Shown: positions 34,778 through 47,584, counted from the first letter of the whole stretch. The stretch: 62,805 nt of DNA, filler included, from Octopus bimaculoides (GCF_001194135.2; 4 parts of 4 records of this genome joined end to end with filler, not necessarily neighbours in it); one strand, 5' to 3'. Notes: generated from the letters alone by a model not told the origin. Numbers and translations: made by a program.

Positions 34778-36111
34778 TATTATTATTATTATTATTATTA
34801 CTACTACTACTACTACTACTACTATTATTATTATATTATGGTGGTTCTACTACTTTTCTTCTTCTTTTTCAACTTGTCTATATTTCTTCTTCTCCTTCTA
34901 CTTCTTCTCCTGGCGCTTTTTCTTCTTTTTTCCTCTACTTTCACTTTCATATTTATTTGTATATCCTCTTTTATCTATCATTGTGTTGATTCTCTATTCG
35001 TCTAAACCTCTTCTATGTAAATCATCACCATATGTGCCGCGATAAGTATTGACGTCCCCCTGATATCCTCAGCACTTTCATTAATCTCATATTCTTTGCT
35101 ATCTTTGTCAATCATAAAAAATTGTCGAGTTCATCACCGTCATCTTCATCATCAACATTATTTATTACCACAAAATACCGCCATCAAATGGAAGATATTC
35201 AACACTAACATCATCATCGTAAACATCACCTTCAACATCAACATAATCAAAATCATTTTAAGCATCACAGAGTCATGCTTATCCCCATCATTATCAGAAT
35301 ATTCAACATTAAAAATATCACCACCATCATCAGCATCATAAAGTTTTCTTCATCAAGACTACCACTATATATTCTTCTCTACTTCCTCCTCATCAATTTC
35401 ATCACACCCACCATTGTGTATATTACCACCATATCTTCCGAGATAATTATCGATGTCCTCGTCTATAACCTCTTCACCGTCATCATTTCCATATCCTTTG
35501 TTATGTTTCTCCATCATAAACATCGTCAATTTCATCATGTCCTCTTCGCCATGAACATCATTCTTTTCTACAAAATACCGCCATCACCTGCAGAATCTTC
35601 AATACTTTTATCATCACTGCCAACTGTAACATCCTCATCAACATGATAGTAATCAATATCATATTCAGAATCACCATATACATGCTGATCCCCATCATTA
35701 TCGGAATAATCAACATTAACATCATGTCCATCATCAGCATCATAACGTCTTCATTATCAACACTACTACCGTATATTCTTCTCTGGTTGATCATCATATT
35801 CATCGCTTCTACCAACAGAAGGTCCATTACCAACGCTGCTTCGAACATTATTCGCAACCTCCTCTTTTCTCATCTCCTGCTCTTTTTCCTCTCCTGCTCT
35901 TTTTCCTCTCCTCCTCTTTTTCCTCTCCTCTCCCACTTCTCCGCCCCATCGCCATCGTCATCAGCATCATCATTATCGTCGCCATCATCTTCATGGTATT
36001 AATCATCATCGTGATCTATTTTCCAGCCCTTAAAGCATCTAATTGTTTAGCCAAACTTTTGTAACAAATATGTTCTATACATTTTCTTATTAACTCAATT
36101 TTATGTTCCAG

Positions 36112-36183
36112 ATACTTGAGTCATAATAATATCAAGGAAATCCAATCAGACACCTTCCGAAATCTGTCCAGTTTAACAGATCT
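36112..36183 (+). CDS. LRR exon A (72 nt, phase 2-2)
   Basis: ttccag|A TAC TTG AGT CAT AAT...GAT CT|gtaagt; YLSHNNIKEIQSDTFRNLSSLTD(L): typical 24-aa extracellular LRR. Confidence 0.92.
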
Positions 36184-36973
36184 GTAAGTTGAACCAGTTT
36201 TCTTTTTTAGTATTTCATTGACAATATATTTCTCCATCTGTAATATATTCCAATATTTCATCTTAAGCACTCTCACCCATCTTTCCAAAAATGTGTTTTA
36301 TTTCTTGGGAATCTGTGTGTGAGTGTGGGCACATTTCTTAGATATCGGAAATCTGAGAAACTGATTGTTCAGAATAACCACTTAGTACATGCATGTGTAT
36401 GTCTGGTCTGTGTAGAGTCTCTCTCTCTCTCTGTCTCTCTCTCTCTGTCTCTCTCTCCCAATTTTGTGTTAATGTCTCTGAATGGCTCTGAATGTGAGTG
36501 AGGATCCATTCCTCAGATATTGCGATTTTGAACGAGTAACAATTAAAGGGAAAATTAGTGCGAACATGTTTACGTATGTATATATCTAAGGCTGCCTGTC
36601 TGCATATGGGTGTGTGCATGCGAGTGTTACAAAATGTATGTGTAATTTCGTCTGTATATCATGTACGGTGTTCACGTCTCCGTCACCACTGATTTCTATC
36701 CTAGACATTTCTTCTCCTTCTTAATCTTCTTTTTCTTTTTATATGTACTTTCCCTCTTCTACATTTTCTTCTTTTTTCGCCCAGATCGTTTTCTTTTTCA
36801 TTGTTTACTTCTATTTCTTGTCAATGTTCTTCTTGATCTCCTTCTATTATTTTTTCATCTTTTTTATATACTTCGTTATCTCCATCTACTTTTTCTGCTT
36901 CTTTGTCTCCTTTGTCTTCGTCTTGTTCTTTCTTTTCTTCTTCTCATTCTTCTTACTCAATTTTATGTTCTAG

Positions 36974-37045
36974 ATATTTGAATTCTAATGATATCAACGA
37001 TATCCAAGCTGACACCTTCCGGCATCTATCCAGTTTAACAACTCT
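36974..37045 (+). CDS. LRR exon B (72 nt, phase 2-2)
   Basis: ttctag|A...ACT CT|gtaagt; YLNSNDINDIQADTFRHLSSLTT(L). Confidence 0.92.
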
Positions 37046-37389
37046 GTAAGTTGAATCAGCATTTTGTATAGTATTTCGTTGACGTTATATTTCTAAATCT
37101 GTAAAATAATTTCATACTTCATTTTAATCTCCCTCACCAGCCTTTAATATTGTTTGTTAATCTTTATGAGTGAGTTTGATCCCATTTCTTAGAATTGGAT
37201 ATATGAGAGCCTGATCATTCAGGGAAATCATTTAGTGCATGGGTGTGTATGCCTCTGTGTATGTAAGACCTGTCCCTGTCGAAAATGTGTATGTCACTGT
37301 TGGTTAATGTTTGTGAATGTGAGTGAGAGACACTTCCTCACACTTGAAATATATGTGTATGAAAATAAAGGGGTCCGACTAGTGCAAAC

Positions 37390-37620
37390 GTTTAGATAAA
37401 TTATGTCAATCGTAATCAATTTTTATCTTCTAACATATGAGGGAGTTAATGTCGTGTTTTACTAGAACTATTTGAGGAACTCATGTATTACGGGTTAATA
37501 TGATAGCGTTTTATAAAAAAGTGATTGTTATTTAAATGCTGTTATTAAAACACGACATTAACTCCCTCATATGTTAGAGGTTATCATAGATTGATTACGA
37601 TTGACATAATTTATCTAAAC
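37390..37620. mobile_element. MITE with ~72-bp TIRs in LRR intron
   Basis: 37390-37461 and 37546-37620 are near-perfect reverse complements (GTTTAGATAAATTATGTCAATCGTAATCAAT...CTAACATATGAGGGAGTTAATGTCGTGTTTTA). Confidence 0.8.
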
Positions 37621-38529
37621 ATTCTTTATTTGTTAACCTAAATTAGAACACATATTAAATCTTTGATCATAAAATAGCGCATTATTTTTGGTTTAATTCA
37701 TAGTTAAATTCACCCATAACAATGACATAATATGCAATGCTTTATTAACATTACTTCTTCTTTTCCATATTTTATTGTACCTCAATATCATTAATTTACG
37801 ACTTCCAATTTATTCACCAATGTGTTTAACAATAATAAGAGTTATTTATGTTCCTGGCTTTCTTAGTGAGAGTTTTCTAAATCTACGATCCTAATTCATC
37901 ATTTCAACGTTCCTAGAAACATCCTTAATTTTTATCAATCATAGTTTAAGTATTTATTGTCGTAACAAGATATATCCCAATCATTTTAATATCTCATTAA
38001 GTAATCATTTCATATAGATTAATAGACAACCCATTAACTTTATTATTCTTTAATTCATTAATTAATTTTCACTCATTTAACATCTCATTCACTAATATAT
38101 GAATTACCTTCAGATAAATATCCCTCTACTTTATTAATAATTACCACAGATCGACAGTAATGTATACGTACTAGGGAGTGTATTAAATTGCGTACGAGTC
38201 TCTATATAAATACATGTGACAACAAATACATAAAAAATATATATGTGTGTGCGATTGTACGTGTATAAGTGTTAATATATACACGTGTATCTGTGTGTGT
38301 GTGTGTGTGTGTATATATTCATGTTTTTGTATGAAACTAGATGTGTTTCTATAGATTTTTGTATATATATGTATATATATATCTATATGTATTTATATAT
38401 ATATATATGTGTGGTTGAGCGTTTATGTATGCATGTTTGTATATGTATGTGTATGTATGTGTGTATATATGTATATGTATGCATGTATATATATATGTAT
38501 ATGTATATATGTATATGTATGCATATATG

Positions 38530-38560
<31 letters not shown>

Positions 38561-45457: not shown

Positions 45458-45529
45458 ATATTTGAATGAAATTAATATCGCAAAATTTCAGGCAGGAACC
45501 TTCGGTGACATGCCCAGTTTAGGATATCA
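45458..45529 (+). pseudogene. Decayed LRR exon F (D-like), donor lost
   Basis: ttgcag|A TAT TTG AAT GAA ATT AAT ATC...CCC AGT TTA GGA TAT CA|ttacgt; YLNEINIAKFQAGTFGDMPSLGY. Exactly 72 nt to the expected donor, which reads TTACGT instead of GTAAGT; conserved Asn replaced by Ile. Confidence 0.75.
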
Positions 45530-45882
45530 TTACGTTGCATTACTGAATAATTAAGACTTTCCCGCATCTCTGTCTCTCTTAACATTTTAAATTCTTATTT
45601 TGATATAAATGTGTCACTGTTTGTGAATGTCTGTAAAAATGTGTATGTGAGTTTGTGTGAATATAAATATGGAGTGGCCTGTATAACATTTTTCTGTATG
45701 TATGTGAATATATATGTGAATGTATATATAAGGACCACTGAGGAGGTCACAAAAGTGTGACGAAAAAACTCTGGCCGAAATAAGATTAATGTAATATAAA
45801 GCTGAAGCAAATTAACACCAAATATACAGTGCGTGTGTTTTTATTGGCTAAACTGGAAATATGACCATCCCCAAGTACAACA

Positions 45883-45933
<51 letters not shown>

Positions 45934-46095
45934 CATNNNNNNNNNNNNNNNNNNNNNNNNNNNNNNNNNNNNNNNNNNNNNNNNNNNNNNNNNNNNNNNN
46001 NNNNNNNNNNNNNNNNNNNNNNNNNNNNNNNNNNNNNNNNNNNNNNNNNNNNNNNNNNNNNNNNNNNNNNNNNNNNNNNNNNNNNNNNATGTATA

Positions 46096-46131
<36 letters not shown>

Positions 46132-46794
46132 TGTATGATTGCATGTATGTATGTATGTATACACGTATACGTAAATTATAATAAAGGGTAAAAATCAGTA
46201 ATGATTTTACCAGTGTGGGTGTCAGCGCGAAAATAAAAAGCTTACAGGTAAATTTTACAAATATTTCATAATTATATACATAATTATAACAAGTGATTGG
46301 TTATAAGACTCTCCGTGCGCTGGAGAAATAGTTAACACTTTAAAATCTCTGAGAATAAGACAGTGTGTTGTAGGCGAGAAAAAGAAAGAAATGAATTAAA
46401 CGTTTGGTTAACTATGAAGAAGACACTATTTTATGCTTAGAGGACAAAAAATATATTGCCTACTGCTTTCATCAGAAACGATATTTCATAGCATAAATTT
46501 ACGAGTATCTACAAATACGCAAGCGAACCGCGTCAGCGCATAACCAATATACGTACAAACTCGTAGAAATATGCAGCAAAGTAGAATTAACCTTTCTCTT
46601 TTATAACCACCTGTAGTATGTCATGACATATTCTGCAGTTAATGCAGTTTTGTTCAAGGAGTAAAGTCTCAAATTTCTTTCAATCCGTGTGTCTCTAATT
46701 TCTGTCATATCACGTTCTTCCTTAATTATTTTTCCTGCTTTACATCAAGAATCCATTCCATACAAATTCTACTTAACTCAATTTTATTTGACAG

Positions 46795-46866
46795 GGATTT
46801 GGGTGGTAACCAAATCAAAGAAATCAAAGCAGAATCCTTCCAAAATCTTTCCAGTTTAGCAACTCT
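46795..46866 (+). CDS. LRR exon E (72 nt, phase 2-2)
   Basis: tgacag|G...ACT CT|gtaagt; DLGGNQIKEIKAESFQNLSSLAT(L). Confidence 0.92.
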
Positions 46867-47584
46867 GTAAGTTGAGTTCCTCTTGTTTATAGTATTTCAT
46901 TGATGACATGTTTCTTAGTATGTAATGTCTAACCATACTTTATTTCAATCTCCCTCGCGCGCTTTTACAGCTGCTGTCTGTAACGTAAGTGTGTTATTGT
47001 TATCGTGACGTTTCGGTGCCAAACATGTAGGGCATTAATATATACGTCTATATATTAAACATAAGGATACATTAAAATGTCTACCGCTAGAAATAAGAAT
47101 CAAAACCCTTATTTGGACAACCAGAAACGAGTCCACATATGTACATGTACCAATAAATATATATCTTTATGCTATACTTGTATGTGAATGTATTTTTCAG
47201 TCTGCTCGGAGAGTGTTAAATATTGTTTTCCGTGGATATATTTTGGGTGCTCCAAATAAGGGTTTTTACTCTCATTCCTAGCGGGTCGACACTTGAATGT
47301 ATCCTTAAGGTTAATATAATTTTAATTCTTGAGTTATATAATGGTGTTCATTAAGCCTGCCACCAGCTATATTAATGTTGCGCTTATTATCAACTATTTA
47401 TATTGCGTTCGATAATAAATAGCAATATTAATATCTTATAAATAATCGGTTCTGAATACTTTTTGCTGATAAACGTATATATGTNNNNNNNNNNNNNNNN
47501 NNNNNNNNNNNNNNNNNNNNNNNNNNNNTTAATTAATTAANNNNNNNNNNNNNNNNNNNNNNNNNNNNNNNNNNNNNNNNNNNN

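What the first reader, a model, noticed from the sequence alone, without database searches (positions are those of the whole stretch)
36004..46990. Modular LRR gene growing by tandem duplication of whole exon+intron cassettes
Seen: five intact 72-nt exons (36112, 36974, 40655, 42732, 46795), all phase 2-2 with CT|gtaagt donors, so every junction makes Leu and any subset splices in frame. Their introns are homologous too: acceptor side AACTCAATTTTAT.TT..AG; donor side GTAAGTTGAA...TAGTATTTC.TTGAC; ~105 bp upstream of A and C align; a CACGTCTC..CACCACTGA module at 36661, 39968 and 41171. Exons are 81-86% identical (A/B 14, A/C 10, B/C 12 differences in 72), so the duplications are young. Established: 72-nt phase-2 LRR exons occur in LGR/GRL101-like GPCRs, Slit-like and Toll-like ectodomains. 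Inference: because the boundary splits the concave beta-strand, exon skipping or copy-number change would create new binding surfaces, giving a candidate diversifying recognition receptor. Gene identity and ends are not visible.
Basis: partly seen in the sequence, partly recalled or inferred. Interest (0 to 1): 0.7.

Follow-up and report, generated by a model that had tools for sequence, protein, structure and literature searches.

The report
Octopus LRR exon-cassette array
This stretch is the middle of an octopus gene whose leucine-rich-repeat binding domain is built from near-identical 72-base exons, each copied together with its flanking intron; this is a known way for such domains to grow, seen here in an octopus family tied to adhesion-type G-protein-coupled receptors.

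Summary
Five intact 72-nt, phase-2 LRR exons lie at 36112, 36974, 40655, 42732 and 46795. A sixth, dead copy lies at 45458. Each sits in a duplicated exon-plus-intron cassette. All three assembly gaps are intronic.

The interpretation needs three corrections.

1. The duplications are not young. Cassette introns differ by 20-34%. That matches the divergence from paralogous loci and exceeds a putative between-species orthologous pair. The cassette types (A/B/C, D/F, E) predate gene duplication.

2. The relatives are not LGR, Slit or Toll. They are an Octopus multigene family: signal peptide, LRRNT, n x 24-aa LRR, LRRCT-like region, Cys-rich region, HormR-like region. In one O. bimaculoides locus this order continues into a gene model carrying GPS and 7tm_2 (adhesion GPCR). 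An octopus-specific adhesion-GPCR expansion with LRRs is already published.

3. Diversification is only hinted at. One O. sinensis paralogue has predicted isoforms that each skip one LRR exon. Scaffold codons give omega of about 0.14 and variable codons about 1.1.

One-LRR-per-72-bp phase-2 exon arrays are already known from gonadotropin receptors and brown-algal ROCOs. This is a new member of a known kind. Gene ends and expression remain unknown.

The parts
36112..36183 (+). LRR exon A (YLSHNNIKEIQSDTFRNLSSLTD+L), phase 2-2
   Evidence: 72 nt, cag|...|gtaagt, open frame, nhmmer E=1.7e-32
36974..37045 (+). LRR exon B (YLNSNDINDIQADTFRHLSSLTT+L)
   Evidence: tag acceptor, GTAAGT donor
40655..40726 (+). 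LRR exon C (SLSSNDINEIRADTFRNLSSLTD+L)
   Evidence: NJ sister of A
42732..42803 (+). LRR exon D (YLQNNKIEKIEVRFCRDLPSLSK+L). It belongs to a different cassette type. The conserved Phe is displaced by one residue (RFCRDL where others have RAFDEL).
   Evidence: Its cassette 42382-42829 is homologous to the L002 15168 cassette at 74-80%.
45458..45529 (+). Dead sixth cassette exon F (YLNEINIAKFQAGTFGDMPSLGY). The donor GT has become TT and the conserved Asn has become Ile. It is D-type.
   Evidence: The downstream intron 45610-45693 matches 42894-42973 at 77%.
46795..46866 (+). LRR exon E (DLGGNQIKEIKAESFQNLSSLAT+L), a third cassette type
   Evidence: The cassette 46691-46967 matches L004 78255-78536 at 78%.
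34999..36111 (+). Intron module upstream of A: CAT-rich, made of two tandem ~420-nt units plus the acceptor flank
   Evidence: 34999-35412 and 35422-35837 both align to 40076-40451
40076..40654 (+). Homologous intron module upstream of C (one unit)
   Evidence: 74-77% identity to the module upstream of A
36184..36973 (+). Intron A->B: donor flank, GT-rich part, the 166-nt module (36575-36740), and a TTC-rich part
   Evidence: colinear with 40727-41282
40727..41477 (+). 5' part of intron C->D, with the same module order, ending at the 10-N gap
37356..39880 (.). ~2.5-kb insertion into intron B->C. It contains a foldback at 37387-37623, a TG/TA microsatellite at 38230-38800, and gap 1 at 39398-39877.
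43940..45440 (-). Foreign insert in intron D->F. By eye it looks like a degraded retroelement fragment, with a broken CCHC-like knuckle on the minus strand.
   Evidence: translation. Pfam finds nothing, so the label is tentative.

Best explanation
The piece is an internal segment of the LRR-ectodomain region of one member of an Octopus-lineage multigene family.

What is shown:
- Each 24-residue LRR is encoded by its own 72-nt, phase-2/phase-2 exon.
- The unit that was copied was the exon plus several hundred bases of intron on both sides.
- The array holds three older cassette types (A/B/C, D/F, E) that are shared with paralogous genes. On top of these there is some local duplication (A/C), one decayed copy (F), and later insertions into the introns.
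- Because all boundaries are at the same codon position, gain, loss or skipping of any cassette keeps the reading frame and makes a Leu at the junction.
- The seven scaffold positions scored (L, N, I, I, F, L, L) are under purifying selection. The other positions change at about the neutral rate.

What is inferred by homology:
- Full-length relatives read signal peptide, LRRNT, (LRR)n, LRRCT-like, Ly6/uPAR-like Cys-rich region, a further region, HormR-like region.
- In at least one locus this continues colinearly into a GPS + 7tm_2 gene model.
- The most likely product is therefore the ligand-binding LRR solenoid of an octopus-specific adhesion-type GPCR, or of a secreted or truncated relative of one.
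- LRR number and surface would vary among paralogues through unequal recombination between cassettes, and possibly through cassette-exon skipping.
For: Exons, phases and splice sites. LRR identity. Sixth copy. Cassette and intron homology within the window.

The same cassettes occur at 68-82% nucleotide identity in four other loci: O. sinensis L001 and O. bimaculoides L002, L003, L004.

Family proteins: P0001-P0004, P0006, P0007 and the long members P0316, P0292, P0326.

Colinearity in L003: LRRNT exon at 10001; LRR exons from 11515 to 16648; Cys-rich exons at 18680 and 18998; a further region at 21794; HormR-like exons at 22224 and 23599. The last three lie inside a called gene with Pfam GPS + 7tm_2.

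An O. sinensis 1088-aa product next to P0326 carries LRR_8 + GPS + 7tm_2.

Literature: an octopus-specific adhesion-GPCR expansion in which 5 of 22 members have LRRs, expressed in axial nerve cord, suckers and skin (PMC6408891).

Selection: omega is 0.14 at scaffold codons and 1.1 at the others, pooled over 96 close exon pairs. Donor GTAAGT and acceptor TTTTAT..CAG are nearly invariant in 41 copies.

Predicted isoforms X1, X2 and X3 of the L001 gene differ by skipping one LRR exon each.
Against: - The piece holds no LRRNT, LRRCT, Cys-rich, HormR-like or 7TM exon. Neither gene end nor the GPCR link is shown for this particular gene.
- No annotated protein containing exons A-E was found. The best per-exon identity is 19/24.
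- In L004 the P0316 gene runs into the next LRR array with no 7TM region found. I mapped L004 only with LRR and P0316-type probes and never scanned it for 7TM exons. Even so, some family members may lack the GPCR part.
- The by-eye domain labels (LRRCT, SEA-like, HormR) are not recognised by Pfam. Only the Ly6/uPAR-like reading has a weak PDB hit, E=0.016.
- There are no transcript data. The pooled omega uses non-independent pairs of 23 codons.
Confidence: 0.7

Rival explanations
1. The array is a decaying, non-expressed remnant: orphan cassettes left by unequal recombination or segmental duplication inside a gene cluster. It would not be part of a working gene.
For: - One of six copies is dead.
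- Exon D has the conserved Phe displaced.
- The introns carry a 2.5-kb insertion, a foldback and a retroelement-like fragment.
- No first or last exon lies in the 13 kb.
- No annotated protein matches.
- Truncated pseudo-copies of the same cassette exist in L001 at 33562, 34050 and 34657.
Against: Five of six copies keep AG, GTAAGT, an open frame and, apart from the displaced Phe in D, all the scaffold residues scored, despite 20-34% divergence of their introns. Scaffold codons have omega 0.14. Introns of 3-9 kb carrying insertions are normal for the annotated paralogues.
Confidence: 0.15
2. The gene encodes a small secreted LRR-only protein (signal peptide, LRRNT, a few LRRs). It would end at a cassette whose donor is not spliced: CT|GTAAGT read through gives Leu-stop. 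The short database models would then be real products, for example from intronic polyadenylation.
For: P0001-P0004, P0002, P0007, the 181-aa L002 model and the 805-aa L004 model all end exactly at ...L followed by the TAA of an unspliced GTAAGT donor.
Against: - L001 ends 1.1 kb after the model's stop, and a further intact cassette exon lies beyond it at 36018.
- The L002 and L003 models are broken at N gaps.
- P0007 plus the 181-aa model look like one gene split at a gap. The 181-aa model starts with a 12-aa exon and has no signal peptide.
- P0316 starts inside translated intron.
- Long relatives continue into LRRCT and further domains.
The short ends look like annotation truncation.
Confidence: 0.1
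3. One reading: the exons belong to an LGR/GRL101-type rhodopsin-class GPCR, a Slit-like protein or a Toll-like receptor.
For: Generic LRR similarity to LGR4/5, TLR3, LRIG1 and RXFP1 structures. NCBI names P0316 'toll-like receptor 5'. 72-bp phase-2 LRR exons are known in glycoprotein-hormone receptors (PMC11378527).
Against: The closest relatives share cassette introns as well as exons. They carry no 7tm_1, TIR, LDLa, EGF or LamG Pfam domain. Their downstream regions match a GPS + 7tm_2 gene instead. Similarity to LGR and TLR is at the level any typical LRR shows: 74052 proteins reach E<=0.001.
Confidence: 0.03
4. The copy number and order are an assembly artefact: repeats mis-joined across gaps.
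For: There are three N gaps in 11 kb, one of them a 10-N placeholder. The related loci are also gap-rich.
Against: The copies differ by 14-31 of 72 nt, so they are not collapsed or duplicated reads. Both sides of gap 1 are colinear with a single ancestral intron. All copies share the same orientation and phase.
Confidence: 0.05

Closest known systems
Octopus-specific adhesion-GPCR expansion ('group 3' of Ritschard et al. 2019, PMC6408891) and the NCBI models P0316, P0326, P0006, P0001-P0004 and P0007
   Same: The 24-aa LRR type is the same and so are the cassette introns (68-82% nucleotide identity). Exon size and phase match. Relatives carry SP-LRRNT upstream and Cys-rich and HormR-like regions downstream, then GPS and 7tm_2. 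The paper reports LRRs in 5 of 22 members, tandem gene clusters and signs of positive selection.
   Different: The window holds only internal LRR exons. None of its exons is in any retrieved model (at most 19/24 identity). The paper does not describe the exon-cassette organisation, and I could not show that this copy is attached to a 7TM region.
Brown-algal LRR-ROCO genes (Zambounis 2012; PMC11378527)
   Same: One LRR per exon, exons of exactly 72 bp, all phase 2. Exon shuffling and duplication occur, splice variants differ in LRR content, and variable sites lie on the concave face.
   Different: The lineage and protein context are unrelated (ROC-COR GTPase, cytoplasmic). The resemblance concerns how the domain is built, not homology.
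Glycoprotein-hormone, LGR and relaxin receptor LRR ectodomains
   Same: LRR exons of similar size (about 72 bp) separated by phase-2 introns. This is the classical example of LRR-domain growth by exon duplication (cited in PMC11378527).
   Different: Those are rhodopsin-class 7TM receptors with a fixed, orthologous set of repeats and no conserved cassette introns. The octopus relatives point to class B2 (GPS/7tm_2).
Tetrahymena 90-bp-exon LRR genes (PMC6564038)
   Same: Tandem arrays of identical-length LRR exons with an extreme phase-2 bias and a junction codon shared between exons. Growth is by clonal expansion and unequal crossing-over.
   Different: The exons are 90 bp, there are thousands of genes, the organism is a ciliate, and no receptor context is known.
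Dscam-type arrays of alternative exons
   Same: Tandemly duplicated exon arrays proposed to diversify a recognition ectodomain.
   Different: Dscam exons are mutually exclusive and use docking and selector RNA pairing. No complement of the conserved cassette flanks was found here, and the predicted isoforms keep several cassettes at once.

Membership tests
Leucine-rich repeat (typical 24-residue type) | Repeated LxxLxLxxNxL-type motif recognised by LRR profiles | tested here: met
   Pfam LRR_8 at E=1.5e-39, 134 bits against a cutoff of 27. L, N, I, I, F, L, L are conserved in 36-41 of 41 cassette copies.
Octopus SP-LRRNT-(LRR)n family (P0001, P0007, P0316, P0326, P0006) | 72-nt phase-2 LRR exons carrying the family's own intron flanks (..ATTTTAT.TT.CAG | GTAAGTTGAAT..) | tested here: met
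   All five intact window exons carry both flanks. The cassettes align over 200-970 nt with L001, L002 and L004 at 68-82%.
Octopus SP-LRRNT-(LRR)n family (P0001, P0007, P0316, P0326, P0006) | First exon encoding the signal peptide plus Cys-rich LRRNT (MFQQLKLTF...CSSRGLTS.PQPIPPNV) | tested here: not met
   tblastn with the N-termini finds nothing in 34267-47484. The piece starts only 1.8 kb before exon A, and first introns in relatives are 1.3-8 kb. The exon may therefore lie outside the piece.
Adhesion GPCR (class B2) | GAIN/GPS autoproteolysis motif and a 7tm_2 domain in the same gene | tested here: inconclusive
   Absent from the piece. Present downstream of the LRR array and colinear with it in the paralogous locus L003, and in an O. 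sinensis 1088-aa product. Not found after the P0316 array in L004, which I did not scan for 7TM exons.
LGR / GRL101-type GPCR | Rhodopsin-type 7tm_1 domain (plus LDLa in GRL101) after the LRRs | tested here: not met
   No 7tm_1 or LDLa in the piece or in any family relative.
Toll-like receptor | TIR domain after a transmembrane helix | tested here: not met
   P0316, named 'toll-like receptor 5' by NCBI, has only LRR Pfam hits. Its C-terminal 474 aa show no TIR.
Slit | Four LRR blocks, each capped by LRRNT and LRRCT, followed by EGF and LamG domains | tested here: not met
   No EGF or LamG in the relatives. Nothing of the kind in the piece.
Exon-shuffled one-repeat-per-exon LRR arrays (a mode of construction, not a homology family) | Equal-length symmetric-phase exons, one repeat each, with evidence that exon and intron were duplicated together | tested here: met

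The most novel reading that the evidence does not exclude
The cassette-specific, nearly invariant intron flanks (TTTTAT at -13..-8; GTAAGTTGAAT at the donor) would be a family-private splicing code. That code would let octopus cells include or skip individual LRR cassettes in a regulated way. A clustered, octopus-specific adhesion-GPCR family expressed in suckers, skin and axial nerve cord would then produce a combinatorial repertoire of LRR ectodomains, and secreted Leu-stop decoys when a donor is left unspliced.
Probability: 0.12. Interest if true: 0.75.

Novelty: new member of a known kind. Interest (0 to 1): 0.4.

Why it matters
The work gives a concrete gene-structure explanation for how the LRR ectodomains of an octopus-specific receptor expansion change repeat number between paralogues (6 to 14 or more repeats in the retrieved models).

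It also shows that current O. bimaculoides and O. sinensis annotations of this family are badly fragmented. Models end at unspliced donors, start inside introns, or are split at gaps. Counts and domain tallies for the family, such as '5 of 22 have LRRs', are therefore probably underestimates.

If cassette skipping is regulated, the family would be a candidate recognition system in suckers and the arm nervous system. As it stands, the feature is a well-documented but ordinary example of LRR exon-cassette duplication.

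Tried and rejected
1. Short protein queries. The 120-aa spliced peptide and a 157-aa alignment returned only short, truncated models. All hits were no longer than 1.75 times the query length (210, 274 and 1282 aa). A 733-aa concatemer of family LRRs was needed to see the long relatives. 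Before that I had wrongly been leaning toward 'small secreted LRR-only proteins'.

2. Exhaustive HMMER search of 1.84 billion representatives with the window peptide. It returned 74052 hits dominated by giant LRR proteins at 44% identity or less. It was uninformative for gene identity.

3. Looking for the window's own locus. L001-L004 all match at 82% or less, so they are paralogues. No tool here searches eukaryotic genomes by DNA.

4. Dscam-like docking/selector pairing. No reverse complement of the conserved acceptor or donor flank was found in the window or in L001-L004.

5. Pfam on the C-terminal half of P0316 and on the retroelement-like insert. There were no significant domains. The only support for the by-eye labels is a weak Ly6/PLAUR hit in the PDB.

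6. ORF listing on both strands. There are only low-complexity ORFs and no hidden gene on the minus strand.

7. P0002 and P0326 loci could not be fetched. P0002 is not on record and the P0326 gene range is too long.

Full report
**1. Observation**

I read the whole piece, 34267-47484. Each is preceded by a pyrimidine-rich tract ending in CAG or TAG and followed by GTAAGT. Each is open only in the frame that starts at the second base.

Spliced in order, they give YLSHNNIKEIQSDTFRNLSSLTDL / YLNSNDINDIQADTFRHLSSLTTL / SLSSNDINEIRADTFRNLSSLTDL / YLQNNKIEKIEVRFCRDLPSLSKL / DLGGNQIKEIKAESFQNLSSLATL. The other two frames are full of stops. D and E are only 57-75% identical to the others.

Every exon ends in CT and begins with A or G. 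Each junction codon is therefore Leu, and any subset of exons is in frame. The peptide scores 134 bits on Pfam LRR_8, E=1.5e-39.

A nucleotide profile of the five exons finds a sixth copy at 45458-45529, E=1e-10. Its donor is TT, not GT, and the conserved Asn is Ile, so it is a dead exon. Six-frame ORF listing shows nothing else coding on either strand.

**2. Gaps**

All three N runs lie in introns.

- Gap 1 (39398-39877). The left part of intron B->C, 37046-37355, aligns with the start of intron C->D, 40727-41039. The part right of the gap, 39907-40061, aligns with 41116-41269. The two flanks are thus adjacent pieces of one ancestral intron, separated by a ~2.5-kb insertion that contains the gap. 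The insertion also holds a foldback with nearly perfect arms at 37387-37623 and a long TG/TA microsatellite.
- Gaps 2 and 3. These sit in TTC-rich sequence and in TA/TGTA-repeat sequence. Continuity there cannot be tested, and a hidden cassette cannot be excluded.

**3. The duplicated unit is exon plus intron**

Within the window:

- 35939-36204 matches 40482-40747 at 79%.
- A 166-nt module occurs three times: 36575, 39883 and 41092.
- About 1.1 kb upstream of A consists of two tandem ~420-nt units. It matches about 0.58 kb upstream of C.
- Intron A->B is colinear with the first ~556 nt of intron C->D.
- D and F share downstream intron sequence.

**4. Relatives**

The spliced peptide first retrieved only short Octopus models. 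These were O. sinensis 'LRRC4-like' X1, X2 and X3 (157, 133 and 133 aa), and O. bimaculoides P0007 (86 aa) and P0006 (251 aa). All begin with a signal peptide and a Cys-rich LRRNT followed by 24-aa LRRs.

I fetched their loci. In O. sinensis L001 the gene has exon 1 at 9296-9478 and 72-nt LRR exons at 17472, 26536, 31973 and 34900. There is a further intact copy at 36019, just before the contig ends, and there are three truncated pseudo-copies.

Isoforms X2 and X3 lack exactly the exon at 17472 or at 26536. Single-cassette skipping is therefore at least predicted in a paralogue.

O. bimaculoides L002 has eight intact cassette exons in 8 kb. L003 has six, and L004 has about 23 spread over three adjacent models.

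Window cassettes align with these loci over 200-970 nt, introns included, at 68-82%. They are paralogues, not the same locus.

**5. A search caveat that changed the conclusion**

Every hit in the first two searches was shorter than 1.75 times the query length. A 733-aa concatemer of family LRRs, which raises the limit to 1282 aa, brought in the long members:

- P0316: 784 aa, named 'toll-like receptor 5', O. bimaculoides, same chromosome.
- P0292: 801 aa.
- P0326: 461 aa, O. sinensis, with the same N-terminus as P0001 and P0007.

After 11 to 14 or more LRRs these proteins continue as follows:

- An LRRCT-like cap (DLRNNxDMMCGCHLPALVNY...).
- A Cys-rich region ending in CCTGNLC. This gives a weak Ly6/PLAUR hit, E=0.016.
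- A further region.
- A motif TFYWPMTK...CSPFTGIWQEPxMSQCY, which I read as HormR-like. Pfam does not recognise it.

In L003 the same regions follow the P0006 LRR exons in the same order, at 18680, 18998, 21794, 22224 and 23599. The last three lie inside the neighbouring called gene, whose product has Pfam GPS and 7tm_2. An O. sinensis 1088-aa product next to P0326 also combines LRR_8, GPS and 7tm_2.

This matches the published octopus-specific adhesion-GPCR expansion. In that expansion 5 of 22 members have LRRs, the genes are tandemly clustered, and expression is in axial nerve cord, suckers and skin (PMC6408891).

**6. The short models are truncated**

All of the short models end at ...L followed by the TAA of an unspliced CT|GTAAGT donor. 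I rebuilt the 181-aa L002 model exactly: a 38-nt first exon, seven cassettes, then GTAA. It has no signal peptide and starts just after the P0007 model and immediately before the 13138-13638 gap. P0007 and this model are probably one gene.

P0316 begins with translated intron. Its N-terminus SNRLAKFLSQLCSIQLFLNSTLCSR corresponds to the window's intron upstream of exon C, SNRFAKIPSQICSMQILINLLLCSR.

**7. Age and selection**

Pairwise identities:

| Pair | Exon | Intron flanks |
|---|---|---|
| A/C | 86% | 72-80% |
| A/B and B/C | 81-83% | 66-76% |
| A vs L002_19790 (another locus) | 83% | 75-77% |
| L001_31972 vs L004_76535 (putative cross-species orthologues) | 88% | 79-89% |

In a neighbour-joining tree of 41 cassettes, A and C are sisters but B is not with them. 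D groups with D-type cassettes and E with E-type cassettes of other genes. The cassette types therefore predate gene duplication. None of the window's duplications looks younger than the species split.

Pooled Nei-Gojobori estimates over 96 close exon pairs give omega 0.72 overall, 0.14 at the seven scaffold codons and 1.1 at the rest. The pairs are not independent, so this shows constraint on the scaffold and near-neutral or mixed evolution of exposed residues. It is not proof of positive selection.

**8. Conserved intron flanks**

Across 41 intact copies:

- Acceptor-proximal 14 nt (ATTTTATgTTaCAG): about 1.56 bits per position on average.
- Donor GTAAGT: 1.95 bits.
- Exon: 1.09 bits.
- More distant intron: about 0.5 bits.

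Non-LRR exons of the same genes do not carry these motifs. No complementary 'docking' sequence exists in the available loci. The cause is unresolved. It could be selection for strong definition of 72-nt exons in long introns, a family-specific splicing code, or conversion centred on the exons.

**9. Comparison with what is known**

One LRR per 72-bp phase-2 exon, with exon shuffling, splice variants and variable concave-face residues, is described for brown-algal ROCO genes. The same paper notes it for gonadotropin receptors (PMC11378527). Tetrahymena has analogous 90-bp arrays (PMC6564038). The present case is a new member of that kind within an already reported octopus receptor expansion.

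**10. Verdict**

The 'cassette duplication' reading is right. The 'young' reading and the LGR/Slit/Toll suggestions are not supported. The recognition-diversity idea remains a hypothesis. The ends, expression and 7TM linkage of this particular gene are not visible in the piece.

Noticed in passing
window 37387-37623: A nearly perfect foldback. The outer arms, 37387-37420 and 37590-37623, are 97% complementary. The inner arms are 57 nt at 82%. It sits exactly at the left breakpoint of the ~2.5-kb insertion in intron B->C, and looks like a MITE or foldback element.
   Followed up: partly
window 43940-45440 (minus strand): Non-cassette insert in intron D->F. Its minus-strand translation contains a broken CCHC-like knuckle (CFECGKTGQKS*HC) and an 85-aa ORF (44659-44916). 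It is possibly a degraded retroelement gag. Pfam finds nothing.
   Followed up: partly
window 34999-35837: The intron upstream of exon A contains a tandem duplication of a ~420-nt CAT-rich unit (34999-35412 and 35422-35837). The homologous intron upstream of exon C has one copy (40076-40451).
   Followed up: yes
window 34660-34840; 38230-38800; 43205-43280; 45890-46165: Long microsatellites inside the introns: (ATT)n/(ACT)n, TG/TA, (TTC)n and TA/TGTA. Two of the three assembly gaps abut such repeats.
   Followed up: no
window 42732-42803: Exon D reads ...EVRFCRDL where all related D-type cassettes read ...EVRAFDEL or GTFDDL. The otherwise invariant Phe (40 of 41 copies) is shifted by one residue and replaced by Cys.
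   Followed up: partly
L001 33562, 34050, 34657: Three 3'-truncated pseudo-copies of a cassette exon. Each has an intact acceptor, about 50-60 nt of exon, then TTC/CTC-rich sequence. They lie between functional exons of the O. sinensis gene and show ongoing cassette turnover.
   Followed up: partly
L002 10001-19865; L003 10001-27242; L004 1-82390: The public gene models of this family are fragmented. Models end at the TAA of an unspliced GTAAGT donor, start inside introns or with a 12-aa exon lacking a signal peptide, or are split at N gaps. P0007 plus the 181-aa model, and P0006 plus the GPS/7tm_2 model, each look like one gene.
   Followed up: partly
tool behaviour: the search for homologous proteins returned only proteins no longer than 1.75 times the query length (210, 274 and 1282 aa). 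It also did not return the 181-aa L002 model, even though that model shares long exact words with the query. Negative results from short queries are unreliable.
   Followed up: yes
cassette flanks in window and L001-L004: The intron flanks (TTTTAT at -13..-8; GTAAGTTGAAT) are more conserved than the exons across 41 copies. They are absent from non-LRR exons of the same genes. The cause is unexplained.
   Followed up: partly
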